Position numbers and translations under genes: made by a program | Notes under the pieces: generated by a model | Told to the model about the DNA's origin: nothing | What the model saw: the letters and a program-made list of their open reading frames with translations, nothing else | The model's database searches: none | Part shown: positions 5,421 to 25,093 of the stretch, piece by piece | Numbering within the stretch: position 1 is the first letter of the stretch | How the letters are laid out: each line of letters opens with the position of its first letter | Sequence record: ON287370.1 | Reading direction: 5' to 3' (one strand) | Length of the DNA stretch: 64,000 nucleotides

Positions 5421-8400
5421 ATGGCAGAGCAAATTAAGATTAACAAAAAGTGTATTAACGATCCGTTATACACACCTGTTGAGCGTTTCTTAAAGGAACG
5501 TATCAAACGCCTTGAGGTTGAAGGACCTGAGGACGAGTTAGCTCTCGCTAAAGAGCGTTACACTGGACTTGTTGCTGGTGACTTAGTTATTGAGAATCCA
5601 GTAGCATTTCCAGATGGTATTACTCGCGTTTGCTTTACTGCGCGCAAAACCGGTTTTGCACGTGTTGACGTCGACATCACTCGTGTACAGATGAAAGATA
5701 TCCTGGAAGACTTCGCCGTTCCTATGATCGAGATCGAAGACCTGGATAACTTGAAAGCTTATGTTAAAGCTAATAAAGTTGATCATGCACTGTTATGGTG
5801 TAAGTGGTTGAACAACTATGGTGTATTGGTTTCTCAAGAAGAAGCTAAGACTATCTCTGGTCCAATGGCTGCTTTTGGTGAACTGTTCTTTAGTGAATAT
5901 GTCACTGAACGTGAATCTCTGACTTTCATTGATTACGACACCCTGGAATCAGGTACTGTTAAAATCACTGATGCGTCTTTCGGTACTGGTACTTATCCGC
6001 TGTTTATTTATGAACTGGTTCTGGATGAAGCTAATGTCCCTGGAATCACGTCTAACCTGCCAGAGTCCATTACTACTCAACGTGGTAAAGACTTCAGCAT
6101 CCCAAACACTTACTGGTTCAACACCACGATCGACATTACCCATGAAGCTCAGATCGAGATCAGTACGGGTTCTGGTTACACTATTCCTAAACGTTCTGAA
6201 GACGGTAACTTTATTCTGGGTGAAACCATTTATGGTTCTGCTGAGAAAGAAGTTCACGATGAGATCTTTGTCCGTGTTACCTATATGTGGCAAAACCGTC
6301 CCGTTAAGAAAACGTTTAAGATCAATGTAATTATCGAGAAGGATAATGAACTTGACCTGACCTTTGAAATTGATCCCCCTACAGTTACAGCTCCTTCTGG
6401 TTCTGATGTAATTGTTAAGATCAAAGCTTTCTACAAAGGTAAAGAAGTTAAGATCACTGCACCACCTTCCCAGATGCTCCAGCAAGGTAACTTTGGTCCT
6501 CTGAAATTCACAGGTCATGATACTGATGGTTCTATGATCTATGAAGGTCATTTGAGCACCAACTTCCCTAATACTGTTGAACAAGTAGGTGGGTTGTATA
6601 CTGCTGAGTTTACTTATAACGAAGGTGATGTAACATCTAAAGCTCCGGCTTATGTCAACGTTATCCTGACTCGTCCAGAAACTGCACCTAAGTTTGAGAT
6701 TCGTAGTTTCCCGGCAGTTATTCGTGGTTATAAAAATGATAAAGGTCTTCTCACTGTAGGTGCGTTCTATAATAACGAACCTATTTCACCAACTGATCTT
6801 CAGATCAAGACGGGTGTTAAAGGTGATAAAGGTCTTATTGAATACAACAGTGTGGATCAGCTCGGTGTTAATTATACACTGATCAAAGATGCCAACAAGC
6901 CTGGCCAAGAAATCCAAGATGTTTATGATCAAAGATTTGCTTGGATCGCACCAACTGGTGTACGATATACGATTACTCGTCAAGTGACCGTAATCGTTGC
7001 CCAGGTCTCTACTGTTGAAGTAGTTCCGCTTTATCCTAATCCGATAGAGGTTAAGAAATACCAGTTTGGTGGTTATCCATTCAAACTGTTAGTTAACGGC
7101 GCTGATGTTACTGGTGGTATCAGCGGATACCAATTTGAAGATCCTGGTGAGTACATTACTCATAAGAAAGGAAGCGACGTTCAGTGGATCGTAACTAAAA
7201 CCCCAGGTGCTGATGAAGAATCCACTGTAACTAAAGTACCGTTCAAATTCCGTTACACTGTTGATGGTGTTTGGCGTGACTTTACTTTCGAACAGAACTT
7301 CAGAGTTCTCCCTTGGAATCCAGATACAGGTGAAGGTGGTAACACTGATACGGTAGCTGTTCCGGCAAATGTTAAGATCGAAGGTCTGTCAGATTCAACC
7401 GGTTACTTTGAGTTTCAGGTATATCACTTAGCTGATGACATCACCGACCGCGCTGTAGTCATGAAAGATAAACTGATTACCCCTAAAGGTATCAGATTTG
7501 ATTCTTTCTCTTACATCCCGGAAACTAACGTTATCCGTGCCAACTACACTAAACTGGACCCAACTACCGAACCTGGTAAAGTTTATATCCAACGTCCTGG
7601 TGTAGATGATCCTAAGACTGGTGATATTGCGATTGTAAGCATCACTACTGATGTCAAACAGTCTCGTGTACTGGTACTGAGCGATTACGACAAAGACACC
7701 ACTGTGGAAGTTGCAGGCTCTCCTGAGCTGGCACATATCACACTGATGTTCGCAGGTAAAGTAGTCCCACTGACTGATGTTAACCTTTCCTACAAACGTC
7801 TTGATGAAACTGACATTCGTTTTGTTGATATCAAAGATGACGGGATCGAAGTAGTCAACAACATTTGGGAATACATTGGTGAAACCCGTCAGTCTGGTGT
7901 TGATCTTGAATACACCTATACCGACCCTCTAGATGGTAACAAAACCAAAGTACGCTTTACATTACCTGTCTTCACTGTTTATCCAGAGATGCGTTTAGAG
8001 AATGCTCCGGCAACTATCGATGCGGCTATCTGGGATACCGGTACTTTACCTTACAACATCATTGCTGGTAAAACTAACTGGAACGGTGCAGTAACAAGTA
8101 TTACGCCAATTGGTACAAGTAAGTACATTGCTTTCAATGTCTTTAACTGGGAAGTTATCTGGGCTGAGAAAGAAGCAACAACAATCACCGTGCCATTAGA
8201 AATCAAATGGACTGTAGGGCAAGCTAAAAATCGTAAGTTCATAACTGAAGTTACTTTCAATTTGGCGGCCTGGGACCAGATTACTTTTGGTGGTCAGTTG
8301 GATACTAAATCCATCACCAAAGATTCTCGCGTTGAAGGTAGCATTACTGGTAACTTTGTTTACAAAGGCAAGCCAGCAGATGACGACGTTGTGCTCGATA

Positions 8401-11400
8401 AAGCAATGTCTACTATTCCAGAAACATTCATCATGGGCGTTAGTGCTCCTGTAGAGAATAAAGGTGTTGTTGTGGGTTATACTACCACTCGTGGTGGTAA
8501 ATACCTGATGACACTGATCTATCGTCATGTTCCATCTAACTTGACAATGTCCTTTGATATTCCAACTGATATCGCTTGGCCTCACGAGTTGAACCTTGTT
8601 AATATCACTAAGAGTATCTCTGGTGTTTGGGAATCCGAGCAGACTATCGATCTGGTTTATAACTTCGATGGCATTCCGCTGACTCTGAACGATCCTAAAC
8701 TTAAATTGACTGCAACCTCTGGTACAGGTGAACCTGTTGAGTTGGTTAAAGTTAATGATGAGTCTCTGACTATCAAGTTGGCTAAAGGCGGTGAACAGGA
8801 TACTGATTACGACTATGAATTCAAGATTCATGTTGAGTATACTGATCCGACCGGTAAGCTTTGGACTAACGATAACACAGTACCTGTTAAGATTCACATC
8901 CCTGGTGTTAAGATCGGTGCAAACCCTTCATTTAACGTTAAGGTGTGGGAGCGCGGTGTTGTCGGCATTACTCTGGTTGATGACCAAGGTAGAAAGGTCC
9001 CAATTGAGAAGTTAACTCCTCGCGGTACTAACCCATACATCACGTTCACTGAACCTGATAACTGGTATGTTACTAGCGGTAGTCAAACTAACTCTATTAC
9101 CACTACTCTGCGTTTGAGTGCACAGTACTCCATGGGTGGGAATACCTATACCCTTGATACTGAAAGCACCTTTACAATCGCTAAGTACGACGGTAAGAAA
9201 TTGGTAATTACCGAAGGCCCTAAAGAACTATCCGGTAAAGCTGGTACTCCTGGTGTAATGAAGTTCCGCTTCACTTATGCTGGTGATCCTGCTAAGAACC
9301 TGACTGTAGATCTTGCTAAGAGTACCATACCTAAGAACATCACTCTGGGTGAAATTACTCCAGATGGTGACTTGCCGTATACCTTACTGGGTCAAGCTAC
9401 CGATACATTAACAATTACATTTGTCAGAGAAAATGCAACCAACCCACCGGTTGTTAATGATGACTATGTAACAACCACAGTTAAAGTAACCACGACTTCT
9501 TCTGATGAAGTATTTACTGTTGAGTCCAAGACTCCAGCAATCACGATTCCTTGGATGGAAACTGGTACGATTGTATTGGCCTTGAAATATGGCGAATATC
9601 CAATCCTCGGTAATACTCCAGGTCTGAAGTACTCGTTAGTCGATAATGGTAAACCTCATGGCATCCGTATTGTTGGCGGTACCGCTGATGGTGTTATTAT
9701 CCAGGCAACTCGCTCTAACGTTAGTGAAGCATTAACTGTTTATCCTGAAGACATCAAAGTCACTTATGAAGTTGGCGCACCTACTCCTAAAGAAGGAACC
9801 ATTTCTTCTAAAGTGAGTATTCAGATGGGTAAAGTTGGTATCACTAATAATGATCCAATTAAAGGTAAGATTTGGGATCTGGGTTCCTTCGGTCAGGGAA
9901 TCAAGATGGGCGATAAAGTTTTAAGTCCTATCCAGGGCTATAAAACCACTCAACCTGAAAATGAATGGATTGAATTTATCGCACCACGTGGTTGGGAAAT
10001 CATCAACGCTGAGAAAACTCCAAGTACCAAGACAGTTGGTATGCAGGTTCTCTACAAAGTAGATGAAGTAGAAGAAGTTCAAGTATTGGATTTTGATGCT
10101 TCGTTTGAAATTCAAGGAAGTGATGATCCTACCCGTTTCAAATGCACAGTTTCGCCTTCTAATCTTGAAGGTGCAGTAGATGTAGAATCTAAACTGAAAG
10201 TTCGCCCTATCTATAAAGGCAAGCAAGTAGGTGCTGCAGCAACCTTTAAACCAGAGTTAAGTACTTTCCCTAAATCACTCAAGTACGTTAGTCACTCAAT
10301 GGCTGGTGTTGATTTTGAGTTAGTCTTTGAAGGTGTGGAAGCTGGTCTGGGTGAAATGGAACTGGTGTTCTGGTCTCCAGCAGCAGGTACTGATCCAGCA
10401 CCACGTGATGTTTGGAAAGGTAAAGTTCCTACCAAGATCATGGGTGAGTTGGGTGTCGAAATTGCTGATCGTGATAACTTGCTGATTGGTAAGGATGGTG
10501 ATACTGGGGAATACAAACTCCAGATTCTGTTTGGTGGGATTCCTATCGATGCTAAACAGGAAATTGCTAACGGCGCTCTGAAAATCACGGTTGAGAAAGG
10601 TGAGGGTAGTTCTCCTAACGCAGGAGTCCTTACTGTTACCGACTGGAATGCTGAAAGCTTTAACTACTCACTGAAAGGTGTTGTTGCTCCAGGTCGTGAA
10701 GTGACTGTTTCTGATTTCATGAACATCACTTATACTTACGGTGGAAATAACTTTACACGTCGTGTAGAGATTCCTGAAAAGTATACCTCGGCGCCAGTAG
10801 CTATTGTTCCGGTTACCCCTAAAGCTTGCAAGATGTTTGAAACCAGTCAAATCGGTATCACATCAGCAAAATGTGGTGATTTGAACTTGTTGACTCCTAG
10901 TTTACCGTCACCAGCAGAATCTGGTTGGATGAACTGTGAACTGGATGAAGAACAACCTAATGGCTACATTACTGTATCTGTTAAAAACTTCACCGTAGTA
11001 AATGCTGATGTAACTGCCAAGTCGCTTACCCTGAAAATGATCTATAACGGTATCTACCGTAACTGGACATGGAAAGGTGAAGCAGAAGTGGTCTTCAACA
11101 TCGCCCCTTGGGATCAGAAGACATTCATTGCTCATTTCATGCGTGGTAATCCTTCCAAACCAATCGCTGGTGATCGGATTGCCTTGGCATTAGAAATGCC
11201 TATGAATGATGAATCTATCCTGTTTGAAACACAAACCATCTTTAAAGATAGAGTTAGTTTCAACGATATGGACACACTCGATTACCTAGACACTGATTTG
11301 AAAGGTGTATTGGAATTGAATAAATCCAGTCCTCTTGGGAGTACTGGTGATAGTGATAACAGAAGGCGGTATTTCGGTCAAGCTGTTGGTCCATATGAGG

Positions 11401-14400
11401 GTGAGATCAAATTAGTCTTCAGGGTTCCAAACTCTCCTAAACCTGGTGTGGAGAACCTGGACTGGACTGCATTGTATCTTGACTGTAAATTTATTTACAA
11501 ACCACTTTTGATTACAGGTATTAACAATAACCTGAAAGGTGGTAACGGTGACAAAGGGACATTGCCATTAACGGTTAAACTCAACGATAAGAATATTCCT
11601 ATCAATGACGCTAACTTGAAATACACCATGGTCCCAGATGACATCATTAAAGTAACTGGTAGCACCACAACCGGTTATACTTATGAAGTCATTACACCTC
11701 TAGATGCTGAATTAGGTAAACTCGAAATCAAATTCTCGCTTGAGTATAAAGATCCTGCAACTGGGTTTACCCATAAAGGTGAATTCACTCAACCATTTGA
11801 AATCGTTAAGCCTGCCGATTATCCAGTCATCACACCAATTCGTGTTTCTGTTGCGCCATTTAACAGGGTAGGTGGATCGACTATATTCAAGATTACCGTT
11901 AGTGGTGTTGATGTAGTCAGTCAATGTAAACCTATTAGTATCACTCCTGTTAATAGTGCTGATGAAGGTGTCCTCGTTCTTGCTGGTGATGAAGCAAATG
12001 ACAATGCTTGGATGTGGTGTACCGATTACCATATAGGGAATCCTCCTTCCGCTGAGATAAAAACTACGTGGGTGATTGAGGTTCCATTCCGTGGCGGTAC
12101 TATACAAGTACCCGATGTTGTGCTTCCTACTTTGGTCGCTAGTTCAACTTCACACGCTGTCTGGATTCAAGGGACAGGTGCACCAAACCCATTCCCTCTG
12201 GGTGATGGTTACGAAGATGAAATTAGATTCAAGATTACCAACCGTGGTTTACCAACCACTAAAGTAACCCTTGATGAAGCAGCCGGTAGTTATGGTCCTT
12301 ATTTCGAGGTCATATCTGTTGAGCCTGATGGCGATGAGATGGTCTTGAAGTATAAAGGTAAATCTTCATTCTTCGCTAAGTTCAATTTCTATTGGAAAGT
12401 CGAAGGTTATGATGGAACCAACGACACTCAACAAAGAGGGGTTGTGCAGTTAAACGCATACCAAATCCCTTCTATTGAAAGTGTCACTGACCCACTGTCA
12501 TTGAAGATCTTCCAGCAATTCGAATTACCATTTAAAGTAATGGCCGGTACAACTGACATTACTAAACTGTGTACTTGGACTGCTATCGATACTGATTACA
12601 TTGAGATATTCAGACCGATCAATACTCAATTGGGTCCATCTGGTCAGGTTGTTAAAGCTGATACCACCGAAGTTAAGAAGGAAGTAATCTTCACTATTCA
12701 GTCTCCTGCTAGTCATGGTAATTTAACATTGACTCAAAAGGTCAATATTATTATTGCTGCTTGGGACCAAATAGAGTTTTATGGTATTCCCACCACTGGA
12801 TTTGTTAAACAGGATGATGGGTTAGTGGTTCCAATACCTTTCACCAATACCTGGAATGCAGTAATCGTTCAAGCGATGATGATGAATAAGGCACGACCTA
12901 ATGCCGGTGGTGTTTCTAGTCTGTCTGATTTCTTGAAAATTACATCTTCAGATCCAGATGCTGTAACACAAACCAGTCAGCTTTCTGATGGGAATGGCGT
13001 CACATCTAGAATCACACCTAATAAAGCTGGTAAGTTCCCAGGTACTATGGTACTACGGTATAAAGGAAATGCCGCGGAAGCCAGTGTACCTAATGGATAT
13101 CCAGCAGGGACTGAAGGTAAGAACCAAAGTACCATTGATGTGACTTGGTATGTCTTTGAAGACAAAATTACCTTTAGAGAAGGATTTGAGCCGAAACCGC
13201 TGATCATTCCAAATGGTAGTACTGCAGTTATTGATGTTCCTTTCGATGCTGTATGGGGACTCAGACAGGTTATGATCAACTCAACTGCTGAGGTTAACTT
13301 TGTTGGCTTGTCTCACGATACTGGTATAGCTTCCCTATTTGGTCAGAACAACACCACAGGAACTAACCGCTTTAACTGGGATAAGGACAGATACAAAATT
13401 CAACCAGCAAAAATAACTGTCGGTGAAAGTGATGTTACAAGTTACTATACTTTCAACATCCAATGGATTAACCCTATAAATAAGAAGAACTACAGTTTCT
13501 CTTATGACCAGCCAATTATCTTTAAAGGTAAAGAGGGTGCCAAAGATCCAGTGTTGACTGTGACTGATGTTCAAGAAGTTACAACTGACGTCTGGAAGAA
13601 ACAAACTGGTTTACCTTTCAAACTGGCTATTGATGGTGTTAACTATCCTATCGATACTAGCACGGTGACAAGTGTTAAAGTTGCTGATGCTGATAAAGCA
13701 TGGTTGGAAGCAGGTCCTAAACTGACTGATGGTTATCGTGTAATTGATGGTGATCCAGAACCTTCAGTTAAGGAAGGTACTTTCATTCTTACTGTGGTGC
13801 AAGGTCCTCGCACCTGGGAAATTGAACAGAAAGTTAAATTCAATATCTCGGCTTACGATGGTAATTCCCTGAGGATGAATATCAGGTTACCTAACTCCTT
13901 CAATAATGGTGTAGCAATTCCTGTTAATACGAATGCCTTGATTATGTTCGAAGGTACATTCCAAGGAGTGGCTCTCACCAATAACTATAACAAGCTCTCT
14001 TACTGGCCAGCTAAGTCCTCTCAGACTCAGATAGAAGTTTACGGTCAGACCTTCCAACAGATGTACTATCAGTTAAGTGCTAAAGGTATTCTGGATTCTC
14101 AGGATTCTGAACAAGCAACTTACTGTATAGGGTTCAAGGAAAAAGAGAACGATCCAAATGCCAAAGAAGGTGTGGATTATGTTATTCTCACCATTCCTAC
14201 CTACTGCTATAACCCTAACCGGTTCTATCCAGTAACTTGGGACCCAGTGATTGAAGGTATGGCTGGTACCAACCTCAAGTATAAATGGAACTTCACATTG
14301 AGGAGAGGTATTGTAGCCAGCAAGTTAGGAAGTGGTACTAATGCCGCTAGTAGCACCGATATTAAACCGGCTGGGGTACTCAATAGAACAGGGTTTAGTG

Positions 14401-15542: not shown

Positions 15543-15562
15543 TACTAATAGGGCCAATAACC

Positions 15563-18500
15563 GTGAATAACAAACAGTCATCTGTAGTTCCATTCAAGGT
15601 TAGAAGCGCTCAAACTGGTACTGACATTACTGAGAATATCAAGTTAACGTCTGTTGAATCTAAGGGGACTTCGGTCCCCTTTTTCAAGGCTAATGACAAT
15701 GATACTTTTACAGTGATCAATGCTGATCAAAATGAAGACAAATTGATCGATGCAGTATTTAAGTTTGACGTAACTGACTTAAACAAGACCTACTCCCTGC
15801 AAGCAGAGAGTAAGGTCAATGTGAAGAAGTATGCACCTGGTACTTTTGAAGCAAAAGTACTTACTAATAATGGATTGTTCTTAAATGGTGTTGTAAAACA
15901 ACAGCGGTATTTTGATTACGTGGCTAAATACCAAGGACAGGAATTACCCAATACCGAATTTTTATTTTTATCAGGATCCAATGTATTTAACGGTTATGCT
16001 TCTTTTGATAAAGAAGAAAATCTTCCGGATGGTAAGACTAACCGTGTTTACTACACACCACTGTATGAAGCAAATGGTAACACGATAGACTTTAAAATAC
16101 TTCGCAAAAATGCTTCTGATAGTACGCTGGTAGGTGATGGTAATTGCATTGTCCCAATGAGGGCGATCTTTGCTAAAAACGCATCCGGATCATTAAACGC
16201 ATTTTTCCCTAACACTTCAGATGCTGGTGTGGTGGGACCTCTAAATGCGATTGTGAGAATTTATCCGATCGTTACTTGGAATGGGAATGTGGTTCCTCTT
16301 AATTCTCCGGCTCTAAAAATTGCTAAACTAGATAAAACAACAGTCACCCCAAATCAATCGGGCGCAAGTAAATTCGATATACTTGGGACAACTGAAACTT
16401 ATATCGAGTGCAAGATAACTTCCGTGGAACCAACTCCAGGTAGAAATCCTGGGTTTACATGGAGACTTACGTATGGAAATGTCGACTTAGATTTAAATGG
16501 GTCCAATGTTTTACTTAAAGATGGTATTCTTGACCCCATAGAACTAACCAATCTAAAGCCCTTAAATCCGAATGCCCTGCAAAAATTAACATTCACTGCG
16601 TCTTTATCTAAAACTGCAGAATGGTCGGCATTTTTATCAGTTAGTGGTGCCGTCTTTGCTTCAGGTAGTTTGATTATACGCAGTAAAAATAATTCAGCTA
16701 TTATCTCCAGTGCCGATATCAGTGGGCTCACCCCTGACCAAGTGGGTCGATATATAAAGGAACTAACGACACCGGGGGTTGAATCAATTGTAACTGTATC
16801 TGGGGTAATGGACTGTTACCGCATCCGTGGTTCAGAAAACATGGCTGGTACAACACCCATGGCAATCAAACCTTTGGTCATTGAAATCGCTGAAGGTAAG
16901 TATATTTCTTATGCGATGCCGGCTGAGAAGCTGAATAATACTGGCGATAACTACGTCATCATTGGTATTAAAGAAGAGAACCAAGATAAGTTCTCTGGTG
17001 CTTCTGTAACTAACTTCAAAGCGACCGGTGCTCTTGATAAAGCTTCAGCTCCTAGTCTGAATGCTGATGGTAGTTTTGCCATCAACATCATGGGTAATAA
17101 AAATAACGGTGAGGTTTTAGTTACTGCTGATATCGTTGGCCCTGCGCCTGAAGGTAGAACTTACAAATATAGTAAGACCTTGATGGTTAGTGGTAATGAC
17201 CAAGTTGTTATTACACCTAAAACGGTACCTGTTAAAGTCTGGGATAGCCTAAGTGAAGTTCCATTTACTGTAACTTCTAGCGGTACTGATGTTACTTCTC
17301 AGATTCGTAATCTGAAATTGGTAGCTAACGAATATATCAAAGAAGATCCTGAAAATCCTGGACATTGGGTTGTTGATACAGCCCCTACAGCAGGTGCTTC
17401 TAAATCAACCTTCTTTACATTTGAAGTTAATGTAACGGGTAACTGGAAACCTAAAGTGGCTTATGGTATTTATCAGATCGCTGCTTGGTCTGGTAAAGTT
17501 CTAGAGGTTGAATCTGATGGGATCATAGGGGCCAGCAAATTAAAAGAGACCAGTTACGTAGTTAAACCCAAATATAAGAAAGAACCAATTGCTGATAAAA
17601 TAGAAATTGTTCTTCCTAGTAATGCTGGGTTCACAGTAGTTAAAACAACACCTTCAGAAGACAATACTGAACTTACAGTAACCGTTAAGGCGACTACCAC
17701 CACGGGTAGTAAAGATGTTTATAACTCAATTACCGTCATTAAAGGTATTGGTTATAAACTTAAAAATAGCCAGGGGACTACTGAAAATGTAGATATTGTA
17801 CATCTAGATAGTAAATTATTCTCCAATGAAGACTATTTGGCACTTTATGGTAGCATAGAAAAAGTTGGTGGTCCATATGGGGCTTTAGGTGCATTTGCCG
17901 CTACGTCGGGAGTATCTGAAATTTATGTCTTTATTAATGGTGATAGAATATCCCTAAATGACTATAAATTATCAGCTTATTTCTTAGATAATGGTGCTAA
18001 CATTACTAGTCCATCCATTAAAGCTAATGCGTTTAGTTATATAGGAGGGGAGGACACGACCCTATATGTTAGAATAACTAAACCAAAATTGAACATTACT
18101 GATACGGCTCACCAATATTATTCACCATGGGCGATGATATATGGTGATGGTGGGGTAAATGATCAATATAAATGCGTAACCAAAAATAACTTTTGGGTTA
18201 ACCCGACTACCACAACAGAAACTCCTTTACTAACTTTACATGAACCTAGTGAAGTAAAGCCAGGAGTAGAAAATATTATCAGGTGTAGAGTTTCTAACAG
18301 TGGTACGCTATTAGAAAATATGAACCTAGTAACGGGTAAATTGGTCCCTATCCCTGAAAATTGTATCGATCTTACCAAAGAGTACTCCATCTCTCTTGAC
18401 CCCAATGACAGTAAATACTTGATTATTAAGTTTACTGCAGGAACTATTGGTGGTAATGTCTATGTCAGGGGTGGTGTAAGTGCTAGTGGTGTTTCGGGCA

Positions 18501-20197
18501 TACCTGTATTATCGGATGGTCTGACAATACCCAAACCTACACTTGTTACTAGTTTAATTGATAATGGGTTTAATGGCATTAATGGGGCCGAAACTGAGAT
18601 TAAGTTTAAAGTAACCTCGGTCGATAAACCTATCACTGGCGCCACTGTTAATGGTAACCTGTTTACTCCAGCAGGGACTGTGAATCAAGCCAAGAACTTT
18701 AAAGAGATTGGTGAAGGTGTTTATAGTCTTGTAGTTGTTGGTAAAGGTATCCAAGGGGAAGGTTCTGTTAAGTTCACTCTAACCAGTGGTGAAGTAATAA
18801 GTGAGGTCACATTAACTCCACTTAATGCGACTATCGACTCCAGTAAGTTCAAACTCACTTTTGATCAAACAGAGATCTCAGGTAAGAAAGGCGATCAGAT
18901 TAAAATAACCGGTAAATTGGTAAATGGTGAAACCAACTATAACCTGGATGATTCTGGTGTTGTTTGGTCCTTTGATCCTACCGATGTTGTTGCAATCACT
19001 ATGAGAGATAAAACAGCCATCACGCTGGAGATAAGTCAGGAAATTCCTTATGATAAAACCACGATGGTTAAGATTAAAGCCAATGTGGGTGGGATGACCA
19101 CTGAAGCTCCACTGGATGTTAAAACTCTGGGTGTTCTAGTTGTAACCAAAACTGATCCTACAGTGAGTGTATGGGATAGGAGTGATGTTCCACCACTTAA
19201 GTTTATGTTGGGTGATAAGGATGTAACTGCTACTGTTGACTCTATTAGTTTCGTAGAAACTAATTTGGTTAACCACAATGGACTGAAAGGTGGTTATCAG
19301 ATCATCTCTGATAAAGCAATCCCTCAGACCAAACAGGATGTGGAGTATACCTATAAGTACACTGCTGATTCTGAAGAGGTTAAAGTTACCGTTCCATTTA
19401 CTATCAATAGTTACGATGGTAAAGAGTTGGTAATCACTCATCGGTATGGTGATGTATCTAAAGGACCTAACGGGGAATTTCTAACCTATACTGGTGGATA
19501 TGCTCCGGTTTACTTCTCCGGTAAATTGAAAGGTATCCCGGTTGGTGAGCTTACTGTGACCCAGTTAAGCGGTGCTCAATATGTTAAACCTGACACTACT
19601 CCACTTGGTTATAATAGCACTACTAAAGAAACCACTTACCGATTTAGCGGTAATGCAAGCAATACCGTAGTTAATGGTACGATGTCGCTGAAGGTTAAAA
19701 TTAAGTCAGCCACTGGCGATGTGGAAGGTATTGACTATGTAGTTGACATGATGGGAATCACGGTCATCAAGGATGAAGAAACCCTGTATGCTTCACAACC
19801 TGATCCTTACGTATTTAAAGGTAAGTTTGGTGATGAACAGTTGACTAAGTTAATTGTCTACTATGGTAAGACTCAAGTTCCTTTAACTGACTCTAAACTG
19901 GTTGTTGGTCCCACCAATGACTCTAAAGTTACTGTAGTTGCTAACTCACTCAGTAAGGATTCTCTGAAGTTACAATTCACCAGTGACACAGATGCTGAAA
20001 TACCTAATACTGGATTTAGTATTTCATTGAAATACACCAATCCAAGTAATGTGGTTAAAACAGCGAATGCAAGTATGGTTTATAATCAACTTCCTCGCTA
20101 TCAGCAACTGACTTTAGGTGAAGGTTTCCAGACGACAGGTGAAGGTGATATAGAGACACCAGTAACTCTGAAACAATTCGTACTTAAACCAGAATAA
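15563..20197 (+). CDS. 1,544-aa modular fibre/adhesin-like virion protein
   Basis: GTG start. It carries the same repeat module as the upstream giant (VPFKV...GTDIT; KVWDSLSEVPF...IAAWSG; VWDRSDVPP...INSYDG) plus an invasin/Big_1-like domain. Confidence 0.7.
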   Translation: MNNKQSSVVPFKVRSAQTGTDITENIKLTSVESKGTSVPFFKANDNDTFTVINADQNEDKLIDAVFKFDVTDLNKTYSLQAESKVNVKKYAPGTFEAKVLTNNGLFLNGVVKQQRYFDYVAKYQGQELPNTEFLFLSGSNVFNGYASFDKEENLPDGKTNRVYYTPLYEANGNTIDFKILRKNASDSTLVGDGNCIVPMRAIFAKNASGSLNAFFPNTSDAGVVGPLNAIVRIYPIVTWNGNVVPLNSPALKIAKLDKTTVTPNQSGASKFDILGTTETYIECKITSVEPTPGRNPGFTWRLTYGNVDLDLNGSNVLLKDGILDPIELTNLKPLNPNALQKLTFTASLSKTAEWSAFLSVSGAVFASGSLIIRSKNNSAIISSADISGLTPDQVGRYIKELTTPGVESIVTVSGVMDCYRIRGSENMAGTTPMAIKPLVIEIAEGKYISYAMPAEKLNNTGDNYVIIGIKEENQDKFSGASVTNFKATGALDKASAPSLNADGSFAINIMGNKNNGEVLVTADIVGPAPEGRTYKYSKTLMVSGNDQVVITPKTVPVKVWDSLSEVPFTVTSSGTDVTSQIRNLKLVANEYIKEDPENPGHWVVDTAPTAGASKSTFFTFEVNVTGNWKPKVAYGIYQIAAWSGKVLEVESDGIIGASKLKETSYVVKPKYKKEPIADKIEIVLPSNAGFTVVKTTPSEDNTELTVTVKATTTTGSKDVYNSITVIKGIGYKLKNSQGTTENVDIVHLDSKLFSNEDYLALYGSIEKVGGPYGALGAFAATSGVSEIYVFINGDRISLNDYKLSAYFLDNGANITSPSIKANAFSYIGGEDTTLYVRITKPKLNITDTAHQYYSPWAMIYGDGGVNDQYKCVTKNNFWVNPTTTTETPLLTLHEPSEVKPGVENIIRCRVSNSGTLLENMNLVTGKLVPIPENCIDLTKEYSISLDPNDSKYLIIKFTAGTIGGNVYVRGGVSASGVSGIPVLSDGLTIPKPTLVTSLIDNGFNGINGAETEIKFKVTSVDKPITGATVNGNLFTPAGTVNQAKNFKEIGEGVYSLVVVGKGIQGEGSVKFTLTSGEVISEVTLTPLNATIDSSKFKLTFDQTEISGKKGDQIKITGKLVNGETNYNLDDSGVVWSFDPTDVVAITMRDKTAITLEISQEIPYDKTTMVKIKANVGGMTTEAPLDVKTLGVLVVTKTDPTVSVWDRSDVPPLKFMLGDKDVTATVDSISFVETNLVNHNGLKGGYQIISDKAIPQTKQDVEYTYKYTADSEEVKVTVPFTINSYDGKELVITHRYGDVSKGPNGEFLTYTGGYAPVYFSGKLKGIPVGELTVTQLSGAQYVKPDTTPLGYNSTTKETTYRFSGNASNTVVNGTMSLKVKIKSATGDVEGIDYVVDMMGITVIKDEETLYASQPDPYVFKGKFGDEQLTKLIVYYGKTQVPLTDSKLVVGPTNDSKVTVVANSLSKDSLKLQFTSDTDAEIPNTGFSISLKYTNPSNVVKTANASMVYNQLPRYQQLTLGEGFQTTGEGDIETPVTLKQFVLKPE

Positions 20198-20212
20198 GGA
20201 ATAGTCCTAACC

Positions 20213-23200
20213 ATGAGCACGCTTAAACAAGCTGCACAAGTGGATGGTCAGACTATCAGTAACCTTGATCCTGATATGGTAATCACACTGGACTCTCATG
20301 AGGGAGTCCAGATTTCCTCCAAGACGGAAGATACCATAACTTATAAATTCCTTAAGGAAGTTGATCAAGATACTGAATATAAACTGAACCTGACATTTGT
20401 TTATAAAGATCAGTATAAGACGGTCGTTCCGATGACCTTCCTCAATAAGAAACCTCAGCCTAAGTTTAATCTTAATGCTGAGTGGATCACCAAGGATGAA
20501 GAATTAGTGGGCGCAAGTTCCAATCGCATTTACTTTAAAGTAACTGATGATCAGGGAGTGCCTGTAGAGGGAGTTACGTTAAAAAATCTTAAGGCAGTTG
20601 GAAGTCCAAATACTCCAGATTTAGTTCCGGGGTATAGCGGGATAATTGTAGATACCAAGCCAGATGGGATTTATGCGATTAATATTAATTTAGGGCATTT
20701 ATCCGGTTCATTTAATATTGATATGGTATTATCTAAGGATGGCTTTGATTTTGTAATTCCTAAAAAGAATTACAAAGCTCCAGGCACCCCAGGTAAATTC
20801 ACCTTTACTCCTAACAAGGTATTTGCTACAGATGGTCCAACAGAAATAGAAATATTTGGAACGCAAGATAAATATGCTAGACCGAATTCTCCTCTGCAAG
20901 GAACCTTTGCTAAATTAGAGATTAGTGGTGGTATGGTTGCCGATCTTTCAGGAAAGGTGACTTTAGATGCGGATGGTAAAGGTAAAATAACCATTATTCC
21001 AAATGGTAAATTGGAAGATATTAATATCTATGGGAGTTTCTCTGCCACTCCAGATAACAGACTTTTAAGTGTGGACCATGATATTATTGTAGAGAAGGAT
21101 GCCTTAACTGTTGAGTTATTGACAGATGAAGATCTAGGTTATCTGAAGAAAGCAACTGTTGTTGCTCACGTTCTAAACTCTAAAGGCGAATATCTCCATC
21201 AACCTGGTAAGATCGTAAACTCTACAATAACTTCTGTACCGACTAACGATGTTGTTAGTAATGTTCCTGGTGAATTTACCCAGGGTACCGCAGATACATC
21301 TATTTATACCATGATCGTTGATGTTGGTTATCTCCCAGGTACAGTTACTATTATTCCTGAGCTAACTATCGCTGGTGTTAAATACGATATTGATTCCAAA
21401 CTGGAATTCAAGACAGAAGGTTCTCCAGTTACAGTAAGTAGAGTTGGAGCGGTAATAGATCCGTTCAAGTCTACCATGATGGGAATTTTCTTCACCAGAC
21501 AAGTTAGGATTGATGGTGAGACCTCAATTTCATTTGGTACTACAGTAGTTTCTCAAAAATCAAGTGATGGCTTGAAGATCGATAGACCATACACCTTCTT
21601 AGGTAAAGGTAACGCAACCGGGTATATTTCATCTGAACAACCTAATACTACGCAAACACTCACCTTTAGCGTTTCTGAGGAAATACAGGGTATCCTTTAT
21701 ACCTATGATGACTTAGTGCTTGAAGTGACTGTACGTGATGGTGTCAAGGAAGAGGTTACCGCCACACCTAAAGCAGACCTGGAGATAATGCAGGTTGATC
21801 CTGAGAATACTAATAGAGATCTTCCGTGCTATCTTGAATTTAAACTCGATAATAATGTTAAAGGTCCAGTGACCGATGCAGAACTTGTTTCTGTTAAAAC
21901 CACTAATGTTCCTGAAACAGGATCCGGTATCTTCAGCGTGGGTGAATCTCTGACCAAGGTTGCTGATAACATCTACAGACTAGATATCAAATGTGATAAA
22001 GGTATTGACTCGGCTCTGTTTGATTTAGTGATCAAATCTGGTGAGAAAGAGTTCACTGTTAAGCAATTTAGTGTTAACATCATCAAGCCGCCATTAAGGT
22101 TAGAAGAGTTAGTCCCTATTAGTATGCTTCCACAAGGGGGTAGCGAGGTTGACTTTAAGTTCTCCTTGATGCAGGCAAGCTGGACTGGATTGGGAACTAA
22201 TAACCCGGTTCTCATCTATAATAGTAAATTACAATTTACTTATGATGATTTCACCATATCTGATAATGCCGAATTTGTTAATGAACCAGCTCAGGCGGAT
22301 AAGAACCCTACCATGACAGTCTTTAAACTTAAGTCTAAAGCTGCCGATGGAACAGTTAAGATTACTGGTACGGTTAATGCAGTTAATTCTAAGCTGGGTA
22401 AACAGGGTACTCTTGAAATCAGTCTCCCTATTGGGATAGGGAAGGAATTAACATTAGTTCCAGTTAGTGATCCTATTCTAACACAGGGTGATAACAAAGT
22501 AGTATTTGATCTCAATTACGCTGACGGTGCTCCTGCAACTGGCCTCACCTGTTATTATTATGATTTCTCTGATGGTGAAAAACGCAATAATGGTTATACT
22601 GGTTATTCTCATCTCAAAGAAGATAAAGATAAACCAGGTCGTTACGAGTCCAATATCGCAGTGGGTTGGGCGCAAGCTACATTCACGCCTATTTGGTATA
22701 TGGATGTTGATGGGTTAAGTAGCAAAGTTGTTAGTCAACCATTAACCACTCAAGGTACTGAACCAGAAGTAGTTCAGACTGATAATACCATCACTAATGA
22801 TGATAAACAGTACACTACTTACTTCCAACTAGAAGTTCCGCTAGTTCCAGGACCTCAAAAATATATTCCTGCTGGTAAATGTGAATTAATATCTGTTGAT
22901 AATTCGCTTACTATAATTGGGTCGATTACTCGTGAACCAAGCAATGGTCGTTTCATTATTAAGTGCGAACCTAAAGGTGAAACCGGGATTGCTAATATCA
23001 AAGTCAAGTTTACTTGTACTGAGTTCATGACGACCTATGTGAAAGAAATCGATCTTGTTGTCAATATTAATCCACCGACGCCAGTTCTAACTGATCTTGT
23101 AACGGAATATACTTTTGATCTGTGGGAAGAGAAAGAACTTTCCTATGATGTGAAGAGTGGCGATGTAAGTGTGGCTTCCAGTGTGACTGATATTGTCTGT

Positions 23201-23428
23201 ACTAATAACGATGATATCAAAGATGATTTTGAATTCAGTAAAAATGCTAATGGCAAGTGGGTATTCAAATCTATTAAATCGGATACCTCAGATGTTATCT
23301 CCAAGAAAGCAGAACTGAAATTCATTGTTGTTTATGCCGGAATAACCACCGAACTAACGGCTGAAGTTCAACTGTCTACCAATGTAAATGCAAACCCTAA
23401 ACCAGAGTTTGATGTTGAAATAATCTAA
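20213..23428 (+). CDS. 1,071-aa Ig-like (invasin/Big_1-like) virion protein
   Basis: Repeated V-x-D-x-x-G-x-P-V-x-G ... G-x-Y motifs, plus a C-terminal copy of the shared module (LWEEKELSY...GKWVF). Confidence 0.65.
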   Translation: MSTLKQAAQVDGQTISNLDPDMVITLDSHEGVQISSKTEDTITYKFLKEVDQDTEYKLNLTFVYKDQYKTVVPMTFLNKKPQPKFNLNAEWITKDEELVGASSNRIYFKVTDDQGVPVEGVTLKNLKAVGSPNTPDLVPGYSGIIVDTKPDGIYAININLGHLSGSFNIDMVLSKDGFDFVIPKKNYKAPGTPGKFTFTPNKVFATDGPTEIEIFGTQDKYARPNSPLQGTFAKLEISGGMVADLSGKVTLDADGKGKITIIPNGKLEDINIYGSFSATPDNRLLSVDHDIIVEKDALTVELLTDEDLGYLKKATVVAHVLNSKGEYLHQPGKIVNSTITSVPTNDVVSNVPGEFTQGTADTSIYTMIVDVGYLPGTVTIIPELTIAGVKYDIDSKLEFKTEGSPVTVSRVGAVIDPFKSTMMGIFFTRQVRIDGETSISFGTTVVSQKSSDGLKIDRPYTFLGKGNATGYISSEQPNTTQTLTFSVSEEIQGILYTYDDLVLEVTVRDGVKEEVTATPKADLEIMQVDPENTNRDLPCYLEFKLDNNVKGPVTDAELVSVKTTNVPETGSGIFSVGESLTKVADNIYRLDIKCDKGIDSALFDLVIKSGEKEFTVKQFSVNIIKPPLRLEELVPISMLPQGGSEVDFKFSLMQASWTGLGTNNPVLIYNSKLQFTYDDFTISDNAEFVNEPAQADKNPTMTVFKLKSKAADGTVKITGTVNAVNSKLGKQGTLEISLPIGIGKELTLVPVSDPILTQGDNKVVFDLNYADGAPATGLTCYYYDFSDGEKRNNGYTGYSHLKEDKDKPGRYESNIAVGWAQATFTPIWYMDVDGLSSKVVSQPLTTQGTEPEVVQTDNTITNDDKQYTTYFQLEVPLVPGPQKYIPAGKCELISVDNSLTIIGSITREPSNGRFIIKCEPKGETGIANIKVKFTCTEFMTTYVKEIDLVVNINPPTPVLTDLVTEYTFDLWEEKELSYDVKSGDVSVASSVTDIVCTNNDDIKDDFEFSKNANGKWVFKSIKSDTSDVISKKAELKFIVVYAGITTELTAEVQLSTNVNANPKPEFDVEII

Positions 23429-23433
23429 TAAAA

Positions 23434-23461
23434 CGAACCTTACGGGAAACCGTAAGGTTCG
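23434..23461 (+). terminator. GAAA-tetraloop hairpin terminator
   Basis: CGAACCTTACGG-GAAA-CCGTAAGGTTCG forms a perfect 12-bp stem immediately after the stop codon. Confidence 0.8.
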
Positions 23462-23494
23462 AATTCTATGGTCATCTAACTAGAGATCAAAGAT

Positions 23495-23566
23495 ATGAAG
23501 AAGAAAGGTATTAATCATTATAAAGATATTCATACAGAACCACCTGCTGATATATGGAGGAAGTAG
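23495..23566 (+). CDS. 23-aa micro-ORF (MKKKGINHYKDIHTEPPADIWRK), possibly the frameshifted N-terminus of the next gene
   Basis: Read directly from the sequence. It overlaps the start of the 495-aa ORF in another frame across an ATATAT run. Confidence 0.35.
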   Translation: MKKKGINHYKDIHTEPPADIWRK

Positions 23567-25041
23567 TGTCTAAAATAATTAATTTACTAGAAGGGCAAAC
23601 TGGAAAGATAGTATATCGCCCTACATTCAGAAATACCCCTATACCGAATGAAGTGACAATAGACAAAGATAATTCGGTACTTAAAGATGCAATTAACCTG
23701 GGTGAGTGTAAGGCGAATGAAGATGGTGTCACTGGAGAAGTACCCTTCACCGCCAAGGCTAAAGCAGAGTCTGATTTACAAATCGTATTTGCCAGAAAAG
23801 ATGTAAATGGTAATGTGGAAGGAAAGGATATTTCAACCCAAGACCTTACTGTGGATATCGGCGCTTCTGAGTTAACAATAGTAACTGCAGAACCCAACAA
23901 AGTGAAACATTCTTCTGATAATACTTACAAAATAAATATGTCATTGAAGAATGGAGATCAAACAGTAAGTCTGAAAGATCCAACATTAGTTAACACCAGT
24001 TCTGATACCTTCACCATAGTGGGAACTGATGAAAACTCCTTCAGCGTAAAAATGAATGAAAGTAAGATTAATAAAGACCCAGCTGTGTTTTCTACCAACT
24101 TTAATTTTAATCTTAACCTGTATTCATCCAGTATTTCACATACGCTCAATGTCTGCTGGGAACCCGTAATACAGGCTGAGAAACTTATCACCTCGATAGT
24201 TTACGGTGATAAAGGGACCATGCCAATTAAAATTACAAATGGTAAAGGTGAAGACATTACTTCATCTATCACCAACTTAGTTTGCACTAGTGAATACTTA
24301 AAATTTGATGCGCAAGGTTCTTGGGAAGTCATTAAAGAAATAACTAATGACATCACTCATGAAGTAACGTTTAAGTTTGACGTTACCCAGGAAGGTTATA
24401 CTTGGCCAATGACCTTGAAGGTTAGTTTTAATTTACTAGCTAAACCAAAATCAATTAAAGCAAGCCTCTTGAGTGAAGGTTCCAGCATTTCATTGTCTAA
24501 CGGTAACATGAAATTTAAGATGGTTTATGATACGGGTGAGATAGTCACAGATGCGACATACGTATCGAGAACTAATAACTCACCTTCTACATCATTTAGT
24601 AATTTTGGCAGTGGGTTTAAAGCTAGTAATTCTGCCAATGGTGAATACGAAGTAAGTTATACCTCTGGCTATAAATATGGTAGTTCTTCCTGTACTGTAA
24701 CTGTTAAAACTAAATATGGGGAATATGTTGTAACGCTACCATCTATAACTTGCCGCGATCAACCATTCTCAGTTACTGCATCTCCTGTCGTATTGGACAA
24801 GGGGGCTAAGAACTCTAAGTTTATATTTACAGCTAAACAACAGCGATCCATAGGCGGTACACCTGTTGAATTAACTGGTAACTTGGAGTTAATATGGTTA
24901 AGGGGTGCTAATATAGTAAGTGCTCCTTCCGGGTCTGGCCCATGGACTGTTTATCTGGCTGATGACGGTATTGGTAATACTGTTGAAATGAACTTCAACT
25001 TAGGGTCCTTATCTGGAACTGGCTCTATCTATAAAGCATAA
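23554..25041 (+). CDS. 495-aa Ig-like virion protein, last of the fibre cluster
   Basis: Contains the shared module (VYGDKGTMPI...GEDITSSI...GSWEVI) and invasin-like domains. An alternative GTG start at 23566 follows GGAGG. Confidence 0.65.
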   Translation: MEEVVSKIINLLEGQTGKIVYRPTFRNTPIPNEVTIDKDNSVLKDAINLGECKANEDGVTGEVPFTAKAKAESDLQIVFARKDVNGNVEGKDISTQDLTVDIGASELTIVTAEPNKVKHSSDNTYKINMSLKNGDQTVSLKDPTLVNTSSDTFTIVGTDENSFSVKMNESKINKDPAVFSTNFNFNLNLYSSSISHTLNVCWEPVIQAEKLITSIVYGDKGTMPIKITNGKGEDITSSITNLVCTSEYLKFDAQGSWEVIKEITNDITHEVTFKFDVTQEGYTWPMTLKVSFNLLAKPKSIKASLLSEGSSISLSNGNMKFKMVYDTGEIVTDATYVSRTNNSPSTSFSNFGSGFKASNSANGEYEVSYTSGYKYGSSSCTVTVKTKYGEYVVTLPSITCRDQPFSVTASPVVLDKGAKNSKFIFTAKQQRSIGGTPVELTGNLELIWLRGANIVSAPSGSGPWTVYLADDGIGNTVEMNFNLGSLSGTGSIYKA

Positions 25042-25062: not shown

Positions 25063-25093
25063 AGAGAACCTACCCAATGCGGGTAGGTTCTCT
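25063..25093. terminator. Bidirectional terminator between convergent gene blocks
   Basis: AGAGAACCTACCC-AATGC-GGGTAGGTTCTCT forms a 13-bp perfect stem between the + stop at 25041 and the - stop at 25104. Confidence 0.8.

What the first reader, a model, noticed from the sequence alone, without database searches (positions are those of the whole stretch)
5421..25041. Four-gene chain of Ig-like fibre proteins that reads as one ~6,500-aa molecule cut inside domains
Seen: the 3373-, 1544-, 1071- and 495-aa ORFs share one alternating architecture (a conserved W..PF..G.DIT..W.V..F.IA.[WY]D domain followed by other Ig-like domains). The domain order continues across each gene boundary. Each upstream protein ends with only the first strand or two of a domain, and the next protein starts with the rest: APFKVISPR* / VPFKVRS, PVTLKQFVLKPE* / MSTLKQAAQV, KPEFDVEII* / EEVVSKII. 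Established: chaperone-usher and type V pili polymerise by strand complementation between subunits. Inference: these subunits may link head to tail by inter-protein strand complementation to build one very long, segment-swappable virion fibre. The alternative is that the breaks are scars of recombination at conserved strands.
Basis: partly seen in the sequence, partly recalled or inferred. Interest (0 to 1): 0.8.

Follow-up and report, generated by a model that had tools for sequence, protein, structure and literature searches.

The report
Jumbo-phage fibre genes split inside domains
Three consecutive giant genes of Serratia jumbo phage Sureiya encode strings of Ig-like domains cut inside a domain, with one beta-strand kept on both sides; the cuts are old and conserved, so the separate proteins probably plug together end to end, but this is not yet shown.

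Summary
The window is Serratia phage vB_SmaM-Sureiya. The four ORFs (3373, 1544, 1071, 491/495 aa) and their repeated domain architecture are real.

A|B and B|C fall inside beta-sandwich domains that are uninterrupted in relatives. pEt-SU and Survivor run through both sites. OBP, Kc263 and AH04 run through the A|B site. Sureiya's own A runs through the site where OBP, Kc263 and AH04 are cut.

The upstream protein keeps strands 1 and 2. The downstream protein starts at strand 2, so one strand is duplicated.

These are true separate genes. Each has its own Shine-Dalgarno site, gaps are 14-33 nt, and the frame relation varies. The start Met sits at one domain position in about 45 protein clusters. 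The A tail is conserved in 12 lineages, and the B head is the most conserved part of B.

C|D is a different kind of boundary: a clean domain end, a hairpin and no overlap.

Best reading: non-covalent head-to-tail joints made by completing a split domain. No complex model or virion proteomics was available. Novelty: a new variant of a known kind.

The parts
5421..15542 (+). Gene A (SUREIYA_01560), 3373 aa: giant proximal protein, about 35 tandem beta-sandwich domains
   Evidence: ORF and annotation. Homologs of 3308-5283 aa occur in OBP-like jumbo phages. The AF2 model of aa 3039-3373 has pLDDT 80-97, and Foldseek hits are strings of cadherin-like or Ig-like domains.
5421..7700 (+). A aa 1-760: conserved N-terminal region, a presumed anchor to the virion
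   Evidence: This is the only part of A with homologs in about 19 Aeromonas jumbo phages, at 25-27% identity. In pAEv1810 the homolog is a stand-alone 1049-aa protein. No Pfam, NCBIfam or PDB hit. The anchor role is inference.
15174..15452 (+). A aa 3252-3344: last complete T domain. This is the site where OBP, Kc263 and AH04 are cut; here it is continuous
   Evidence: Alignment with cut and uncut relatives; HMM hit; AF2 strands with pLDDT above 90.
15453..15539 (+). A tail, aa 3345-3373 (TTPFVTDITQIDAEYGKSYLAPFKVISPR): strands 1 and 2 of a P domain, then stop
   Evidence: It aligns to the first two strands of the intact P domain of pEt-SU, Survivor, OBP gp206 and Kc263 and of Sureiya's own internal P domains. 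Mean column identity is 0.54 against 0.47 for the rest, with S, Y, P, F and V invariant in 12 sequences. AF2 pLDDT is about 83-85.
15543..15562 (+). A|B gap of 20 nt. A's stop is followed by two more in-frame stops, there is an AGGG Shine-Dalgarno-like site, and B starts with GTG in another frame
   Evidence: RNA fold is not significant, z = -1.5.
15563..20197 (+). Gene B (SUREIYA_01570), 1544 aa: middle segment
   Evidence: Eight homologs of 1523-1563 aa.
15563..15847 (+). B head, aa 1-95: a P domain that lacks a proper strand 1 and starts just before strand 2 (VNNKQSSVVPFKV...)
   Evidence: It is the most conserved part of B: identity 0.85 against 0.38 for aa 96-420. AF2 pLDDT is 33-74 here and 78-95 in the next domains.
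20117..20194 (+). B tail, aa 1519-1544 (GEGFQTTGEGDIETPVTLKQFVLKPE): strands 1 and 2 of a T domain, then stop
   Evidence: It aligns to the start of the continuous T domain in A and in pEt-SU and Survivor. The same tail type precedes every T head examined, 20 of 20. The Q is invariant in 20 of 20 tails.
20198..20212 (+). B|C gap of 15 nt with a GGA Shine-Dalgarno-like site
   Evidence: RNA fold is not significant, z = -0.8.
20213..23428 (+). Gene C (SUREIYA_01580), 1071 aa: distal segment
20213..20467 (+). C head, aa 1-85: T domain that begins at strand 2 (MSTLKQAAQV...)
   Evidence: In a search of 1.84 billion representatives, 51 clusters match and about 45 have the domain at residues 1-80 of proteins 84-3124 aa long.
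23030..23425 (+). C aa 940-1071: conserved C-terminal cap domain ending ...KPEFDVEII
   Evidence: Homologous to the C-terminal halves of OBP gp204/205, Kc263, AH04 and pEt-SU proteins. The end motif is C-terminal in 37 of 39 occurrences.
23434..23461 (.). Perfect 12-bp hairpin between C and D
   Evidence: z = -4.3. The consensus scan lists it as terminator-like on the minus strand only. GC-rich hairpins also follow the cap-domain genes of OBP, Kc263 and pEt-SU.
23566..25041 (+). Gene D (SUREIYA_01590), 491 aa from the annotated GTG, or 495 aa from the ATG at 23554: last protein, with a complete first domain; not an overlap junction
   Evidence: Homologs are AH04 gp194, OBP gp203 and the Survivor 415-aa protein, with heads of the same type. 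It contains T and P domains.

Best explanation
A, B and C are three separately translated segments of one very long, thin appendage of the jumbo phage, built from tandem Ig-like or cadherin-like beta-sandwich domains.

Each gene boundary lies just after the first beta-hairpin of a domain. The upstream protein ends with strand 1, a turn and strand 2. The downstream protein begins at strand 2 and has no proper strand 1.

Inferred mechanism: the upstream C-terminal hairpin docks into the N-terminally incomplete first domain of the downstream protein and completes its fold. This gives a non-covalent head-to-tail joint. The duplicated strand 2 either acts as the downstream protein's own placeholder and is displaced, or it adds to the sheet edge.

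Two connector types exist in this phage: a P-domain type at A|B and a T-domain type at B|C. Matching types would set the order of assembly.

The short gaps, each with its own ribosome-binding site, would let the downstream head emerge next to the upstream tail. D follows a complete cap domain and a hairpin and is attached, if at all, in another way.

Shown: the split sites, the overlap, their conservation and separate translation signals. Inferred: fold completion, the joint, and virion location.
For: 1. The cut domains are continuous in relatives. pEt-SU and Survivor giants run through both sites. OBP, Kc263 and AH04 second genes run through the A|B site. Sureiya, N1M2 and SXP01 A run through the site cut in OBP, Kc263 and AH04.
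2. Both cut types have the same topology, after the strand 1-2 hairpin with strand 2 on both sides.
3. The A tail has the same end point and invariant residues in 12 lineages at 41-99% identity. Its identity is 0.54-0.61 against 0.47 for the rest.
4. The B head is nearly invariant: 0.85 against 0.38.
5. The T head starts at residue 1 in about 45 of 51 representative clusters, on proteins of 84-3124 aa.
6. Every T head examined follows a gene with the matching tail, 20 of 20, including metagenome contigs.
7. Each junction has a Shine-Dalgarno-like site and a gap of 14-33 nt, and the frame relation varies.
8. Split and continuous states interconverted. The A|B-type clade is monophyletic (98% bootstrap), the long continuous clade is monophyletic (100%), and the phages cut at the earlier site are basal. 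This is expected if both states give the same structure.
9. SXP01 carries two 28%-identical middle segments with the same head and tail types. This fits connectors rather than mere gene order.
10. AF2 models the A tail confidently (pLDDT about 83-85) but the sequence-conserved B head poorly (33-74).
Against: - No two-chain model, cross-link, proteome or image was available, so fold completion is untested.
- The downstream head keeps its own strand 2. At B|C it lacks only a short strand 1, so it might be stable alone.
- The low AF2 confidence of the B head may only reflect a 7-sequence, nearly invariant alignment.
- Tail and head peptides do not covary across 20 pairs (p = 0.054 by BLOSUM score, 0.6 by identity).
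- One metagenomic protein has a T-type tail with no downstream gene on the same strand.
- N1M2 micrographs showed no tail fibres (PMC7058600), though Kc263 showed fibres (PMC8402661).
- No family or solved-structure hit names any of the proteins.
Confidence: 0.5

Rival explanations
1. The segments do join head to tail, but through ordinary domain-domain contacts. The conserved head domain binds the folded end of the upstream protein. The upstream hairpin simply packs on its own last T domain, and the duplicated strand is a tolerated leftover.
For: - AF2 gives the A tail high confidence without any partner, as if it were held by A itself.
- The T head lacks only a four-residue strand 1.
- There is no tail/head covariation.
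- A conserved N-terminal attachment domain with a variable distal part is the usual pattern in phage fibre proteins (established knowledge).
Against: - It does not explain why both cut types fall at the same place inside a domain rather than in a linker.
- It does not explain why B lacks a proper strand 1 with the conserved aromatic residue.
- It does not explain why the copy of strand 2 in the tail keeps invariant residues (P, F, V at A|B; Q in 20 of 20 at B|C).
Confidence: 0.2
2. The cuts are scars of gene fission or recombination at conserved strands. The products are independent proteins, or partly dispensable ones, that do not form one fibre.
For: - Split and continuous states both exist in the family and have interconverted.
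- Module content downstream of the heads is very variable, from 84 to 3124 aa.
- One T-type tail has no adjacent partner.
Against: - A neutral dangling hairpin should decay or be trimmed. Instead its length and key residues are fixed over lineages only 41% identical.
- Heads are the most conserved part of the downstream proteins.
- The matching tail precedes every head examined, 20 of 20.
Confidence: 0.12
3. Recoding (stop-codon readthrough, frameshifting or ribosome hopping between the duplicated codons) makes a single ~6000-aa chain.
For: - The duplicated strand gives short matching codon runs on both sides of each gap.
- In this window B and C happen to share a reading frame.
Against: - The frame relation at homologous junctions is 0, 1 or 2 in different phages.
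- A ends with three in-frame stops within five codons.
- N1M2 has a stop in the B frame between the A stop and the B start.
- Every junction has its own Shine-Dalgarno-like site and start codon.
- There is no significant RNA structure at A|B or B|C.
Confidence: 0.03
4. The chain is real but is not a tail fibre. It could be another appendage, such as a head or whisker-like fibre, or a non-virion adhesin.
For: - No homology to any known fibre or baseplate family.
- The locus lies next to nrdB-side early-type genes in relatives and about 25 kb from the baseplate genes.
- No fibres were seen on N1M2.
Against: - Foldseek finds phage virion and fibre-annotated Ig strings among the matches.
- Fibres are visible on Kc263.
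- Thin single-chain Ig strings are easily missed in negative stain (own knowledge).
Confidence: 0.15

Closest known systems
Donor-strand complementation and exchange in chaperone-usher pili (Fim, Pap)
   Same: An incomplete Ig-like fold in one subunit would be completed by a strand from the neighbouring subunit, giving a non-covalent linear assembly.
   Different: In pili the missing strand is the C-terminal G strand, and the donor is an N-terminal extension of the next subunit. Subunits have a single domain, and a chaperone and an usher are needed. Here the missing strand is the N-terminal one, the donor is a C-terminal two-strand hairpin, each partner is a giant multi-domain protein, each joint occurs once, and one strand is duplicated.
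Type V pili of Bacteroidia (FimA, Mfa1) protease-mediated strand exchange
   Same: A C-terminal strand of one subunit fills a groove first occupied by the N-terminal strand of its partner. This is the closest analogue to the 'own strand as placeholder' reading of the duplicated strand.
   Different: Type V pili need proteolytic removal of the N-terminal strand and form homopolymers. No protease step or polymerisation is indicated here, and nothing was tested.
T4 long tail fibre (gp34-gp35-gp36-gp37) and other multi-gene phage fibres
   Same: Consecutive genes, in order of assembly, encode serial segments of one fibre. The proximal anchor is conserved and the distal parts vary.
   Different: T4 segments are trimeric beta-structures joined by dedicated domains and need chaperones. 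No sequence or profile similarity was found. The proteins here are strings of Ig-like domains cut inside a domain.
Cadherin EC1 strand-swap dimers and split-domain tags derived from Ig-like adhesin domains
   Same: A terminal beta-strand can occupy either its own domain or a partner's. The A-tail model's best fold matches are cadherin ectodomain strings.
   Different: The fold match is generic (TM 0.2-0.3, identity about 10%). There are no calcium sites and no isopeptide residues: the K of PFKV and TLKQ is not invariant.

Membership tests
Tandem Ig-like/cadherin-like beta-sandwich repeat proteins | Chain of ~85-100-aa all-beta sandwich domains | tested here: met
   The AF2 models are all-beta, with pLDDT 80-97 in A aa 3039-3373 and 78-95 in B aa 100-310. 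Foldseek E-values are 1e-8 to 1e-10 to cadherin and protocadherin strings, phage SU10 virion chain 7z4b_DW and S-layer EA1.
Chaperone-usher donor-strand complementation | The acceptor subunit lacks its C-terminal G strand, and the donor is the N-terminal extension of the next subunit | tested here: not met
   The acceptor (B head, C head) lacks the N-terminal strand 1. The candidate donor is the C-terminal hairpin of the upstream protein.
Chaperone-usher donor-strand complementation | Dedicated periplasmic chaperone and outer-membrane usher | not tested
   The four proteins and the two upstream genes have no Pfam or NCBIfam hits. Other neighbours were not scanned. A phage particle assembles in the cytoplasm (established knowledge).
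Type V pilus strand exchange | The acceptor's N-terminal strand is removed and replaced by a C-terminal strand of the partner | not testable with these tools
   The duplicated strand 2 on both sides is compatible with this. No complex model or N-terminal proteomics was available.
T4-type multi-gene long tail fibre | Homology to gp34-37-type fibre proteins or other catalogued phage fibre families | tested here: not met
   No PHROG, Pfam, NCBIfam or PDB sequence hit.
T4-type multi-gene long tail fibre | Consecutive genes encode serial segments, with a conserved proximal anchor and variable distal parts | tested here: inconclusive
   Gene order, colinearity with uncut relatives and the conservation pattern fit. 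Physical seriality was not tested.
Programmed recoding (readthrough, frameshift, bypass) | Conserved frame relation and recoding signals at the junction | tested here: not met
   The frame offset is 0, 1 or 2 among homologous junctions. Each junction has its own Shine-Dalgarno-like site and start. There are multiple stops and no significant RNA fold.
Pseudogene or assembly artefact | Break absent from relatives, or at varying random positions | tested here: not met
   The same end point occurs in 12 A lineages and 8 B lineages and in about 45 T-head clusters. The window is 100% identical to the deposited genome, and Yubaba has the same genes.

The most novel reading that the evidence does not exclude
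OBP-like jumbo phages use a small set of 'overlap connectors'. A giant fibre protein ends with the first beta-hairpin of a domain. The next protein carries the rest of that domain plus its own copy of strand 2, which acts as a built-in placeholder. The hairpin displaces the placeholder in a chaperone-free strand exchange. Connector types (P type, T type) would form an assembly code that fixes segment order and lets alternative segments, such as the two middle genes of SXP01, build different fibres on one anchor.
Probability: 0.3. Interest if true: 0.85.

Novelty: new variant of a known kind. Interest (0 to 1): 0.66.

Why it matters
Multi-gene phage fibres and strand-complemented pili are both known. 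A fibre whose segments are joined by completing a split Ig-like domain, with one strand kept on both partners, has not been described in the papers I could search.

If true, it would explain three things:
- how phages build appendages of more than 6000 residues from separate genes;
- why the same chain is cut at different, but topologically identical, places in related phages;
- how natural module diversity is organised downstream of a conserved head.

It also gives annotation rules. Several public records mis-call or miss these genes (N1M2, SXP01). The claim is directly testable with descriptive structural and proteomic data.

Tried and rejected
**Searches that found nothing**
- Pfam, PHROGs and NCBIfam on all six proteins gave nothing except a YtkA-like hit in B at the cut-off.
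- PDB sequence searches with the T-head profile, the A anchor and D gave nothing.
- BLAST self-comparison of the four proteins was almost empty, so profile iteration was needed.
- A single-sequence scan of IMG/VR found nothing. The profile scan found four loci, two of them already known phages.
- The word-indexed protein search gave only 4, 12 and 8 homologs, so the AF2 alignments were shallow.
- The OBP genome and proteome paper (J Virol 2012; PMCID shown) is not held. No virion proteome covering these proteins was found.

**Tests with a negative result**
- The tail/head covariation test was not significant.
- Recoding was considered and rejected.
- An isopeptide-locked joint was considered and dropped, because the lysines in the duplicated strands are not invariant.

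**Not done**
- No fused or read-through protein was built or folded, so a direct complex test was not possible with the single-chain tool.
- Model coordinates are not returned, so I could not see what the A tail packs against.

**Housekeeping**
- The alignment tools printed consensus lines on their own.
- My notes hold short motif patterns for the junction peptides only.
Full report
**Identity of the window**

The window is 100% identical to Serratia phage vB_SmaM-Sureiya (ON287370.1, 256 kb, genus Petsuvirus), record positions 124001-188000. Its host is Serratia marcescens LVF3 and it came from sewage. It is a jumbo myovirus with a head of about 128 nm and a tail of about 202 nm (PMC10070969). 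Everything described here is a bacteriophage locus.

**The observation**

Four + strand ORFs occupy the region:
- A, 5421-15542, 3373 aa
- B, 15563-20197, 1544 aa, GTG start
- C, 20213-23428, 1071 aa
- D, 23566 (annotated GTG) or 23554 (ATG) to 25041, 491 or 495 aa

All four are annotated 'hypothetical' and have no Pfam, PHROG or NCBIfam assignment. The quoted terminal peptides are present.

BLAST sees almost no similarity among the four proteins. Iterated profiles show two recurring ~85-95-aa domains:
- A 'T' domain occurs in A at about 772, 1074, 1381, 1695, 2046 and 3265; in B at 237, 1113 and 1427; in C at 2; in D at 120.
- A 'P' domain occurs in A at 541, 866, 1171, 1479, 2358, 2720 and 3053; in B at 1, 555 and 1199; in C at 966; in D at 213.

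AF2 models are all-beta and confident (A aa 3039-3373 pLDDT 80-97; B aa 100-310 pLDDT 78-95). Foldseek matches strings of cadherin-like or Ig-like domains, a phage SU10 virion chain and an S-layer protein. In the viral library it matches the homologous pieces of the pEt-SU and OBP proteins.

**The cuts lie inside domains that are continuous elsewhere**

Nine sequenced relatives have a giant A homolog followed at 14-33 nt by one to four further genes. They are Yubaba, Klebsiella N1M2, Shewanella SXP01, Pseudomonas OBP, Kosakonia Kc263, Erwinia AH04, Pantoea Survivor, Edwardsiella pEt-SU and two IMG/VR contigs.

The chain is colinear among them but cut at different places:
- A aa 3151-3270 aligns to the last 120 aa of OBP gp207, and A 3266-3372 aligns to residues 4-110 of the next OBP gene. 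OBP, and likewise Kc263 and AH04, is therefore cut where Sureiya A is continuous.
- B 10-119 aligns to residues 104-213 of that same OBP gene. OBP, Kc263 and AH04 are therefore continuous where Sureiya is cut.
- The 5119-aa pEt-SU and 5094-aa Survivor proteins run through both sites.

**The geometry of each cut**

Both cut types have the same topology:
- At A|B the P domain is split. A ends with ITQIDAEY (strand 1), GKSY (turn) and LAPFKVIS (strand 2), followed by PR and the stop. B starts VNNKQSSVVPFKVRS. It has its own strand 2 but no proper strand 1: polar residues stand where the internal P domains have V.V.W-D/E.
- At B|C the T domain is split. B ends GFQTTGEG (strand 1 and turn) ... PVTLKQFVL (strand 2) KPE. 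C starts M-STLKQAAQV (strand 2).

The upstream protein therefore carries a two-strand hairpin and the downstream protein repeats strand 2.

The shared 4-mers occur in about 0.3% of shuffles each.

**The cuts are old, precise and under selection**

- Twelve A homologs of 3308-3376 aa, 41-99% identical, all end four or five residues after PF.V. S, Y, P, F and V are invariant in the tail.
- The last 29 aa are at least as conserved as the folded domains: 0.54 against 0.47, and 0.61 for the last 13.
- Eight B homologs share an almost invariant head. Identity is 0.85 for aa 1-95 and 0.38 for aa 96-420.
- A full HMMER pass over 1.84 billion representatives with C aa 1-88 found 51 clusters. In about 45 of them the domain sits at residues 1-80, Met aligned to Met, on proteins of 84 to 3124 aa. 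It is internal essentially only in the 5100-5300-aa giants and in an A fragment.
- Every T head I could place on a contig follows a gene with the matching tail, 20 of 20. The tail glutamine is invariant (20/20). The head glutamine is present in 17/20.

**These are separate genes, not a recoded single gene**

- Every junction has an AGGA-like site 8-12 nt before its own ATG or GTG.
- The frame relation between neighbours is 0, 1 or 2 in different phages.
- A ends with three in-frame stops within five codons.
- N1M2 has a stop in the B frame between the two genes.
- The junction RNAs do not fold better than shuffles.

**History of the cuts**

A neighbour-joining tree of the A anchor region, rooted on the 1049-aa stand-alone Aeromonas homolog, gave these groupings:
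- The A|B-type clade is monophyletic (98% bootstrap).
- The long uncut clade is monophyletic (100%).
- OBP, Kc263 and AH04 are basal, with weak support.

At least two or three fission or fusion events therefore happened in this small region. All of them left the same topology. This is what one expects if the split and unsplit domains are structurally equivalent.

**C|D is different**

- C ends with a complete, conserved cap domain. Its end motif is C-terminal in 37 of 39 occurrences and also closes the last gene of the chain in pEt-SU and Kc263.
- The gap is 125-137 nt and holds a perfect 12-bp hairpin (z = -4.3). Similar GC-rich hairpins follow the cap genes of OBP, Kc263 and pEt-SU.
- D begins with a complete first strand, as its homologs do.
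- There is no shared 3-mer.

**Mechanism**

Shown:
- split sites, overlap and conservation;
- independent translation signals;
- interconversion of split and continuous states.

Inferred:
- The upstream hairpin completes the downstream domain and so makes a non-covalent joint.
- The two connector types fix the order A-B-C.
- Tight gene spacing favours assembly as the chains emerge. This follows from what is known about operon order and co-translational assembly.

Observations that fit this reading:
- SXP01 has two middle genes, 28% identical, each with a P-type head and a T-type tail. They sit between an A with a P-type tail and a C homolog with a T-type head.
- AF2 models the A tail confidently and the B head poorly. 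The latter may be an effect of the shallow alignment.

What the duplicated strand does (placeholder displaced, or sheet augmentation) is open. Covariation between tail and head was not significant.

Virion location is inferred from fold, size and family context only. Fibres were seen on Kc263 (PMC8402661) and not on N1M2 (PMC7058600). No proteome was found.

**Comparison with known systems**

It works most like donor-strand complementation or exchange in pili, and especially like type V pili, where a C-terminal strand replaces the partner's N-terminal strand. It is not a member of those systems. The polarity is reversed relative to chaperone-usher pili, and there is no polymerisation and no chaperone, usher or protease.

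In gene organisation it resembles the T4 long tail fibre but shares no homology with it.

I rate it a new variant of a known kind. My confidence is 0.5 for fold-completing joints, 0.2 for ordinary domain docking, 0.12 for neutral scars and 0.03 for recoding. The possibility that the chain is not a tail fibre (0.15) is a separate question that overlaps the others.

- No fused, read-through, consensus or repaired gene sequence was built.
- Consensus lines printed by the alignment tool were not used.
- My notes contain only short motif patterns for the junction peptides.

Noticed in passing
L003 (Klebsiella phage N1M2) 25145-25768: The 625-nt 'intergenic gap' in the N1M2 record is coding. The B homolog ORF is open from L003:25154 and starts like Sureiya B, so the annotated start at 25769 is too late by about 200 codons.
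   Followed up: partly
L006 (Shewanella phage SXP01) 26773-31344 and 31361: There is an unannotated ~1519-aa second middle-segment gene, 28% identical to the first, with the same head and tail types. The next gene really starts at 31361 with a T-type head, not at the annotated 31382.
   Followed up: partly
window 23434-23461; L004 after 32692; L005 after 26060; L009 after 36751: GC-rich hairpins, several with UUCG-like loops, sit directly after the genes that end with the cap domain. This may be transcriptional or mRNA-stability punctuation in front of the last small gene or genes.
   Followed up: partly
window 25063-25093: A 13-bp terminator-like hairpin lies between the convergent gene D and the minus-strand gene at 25104-25451.
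   Followed up: no
window 78-2399 and 2478-5306: Two large upstream + strand genes (773 and 942 aa) are conserved in position in all relatives and have no family hits. The second has a conserved C-terminal peptide in the closest relatives. They may belong to the same appendage module.
   Followed up: no
window 5421-~8100 (A aa 1-~900): Only this N-terminal part of A has homologs in about 19 Aeromonas jumbo phages. In pAEv1810 the homolog is a stand-alone 1049-aa protein. A conserved anchor seems to carry extensions of very different length.
   Followed up: partly
P0014: One A homolog is named as a Salmonella enterica serovar Saintpaul protein on a 267-kb contig. This is probably a jumbo phage genome sitting in a bacterial assembly.
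   Followed up: no
L022 3001-4266: A 421-aa metagenomic protein has both a T-type head and a T-type tail, but the next gene is on the other strand. It is a tail without an adjacent partner.
   Followed up: no
window 15674-15859 (B aa 38-99): A weak Pfam YtkA-like hit lies exactly at the gathering score (26.0 against 25.9 bits). It probably only reflects the generic beta-sandwich fold.
   Followed up: no
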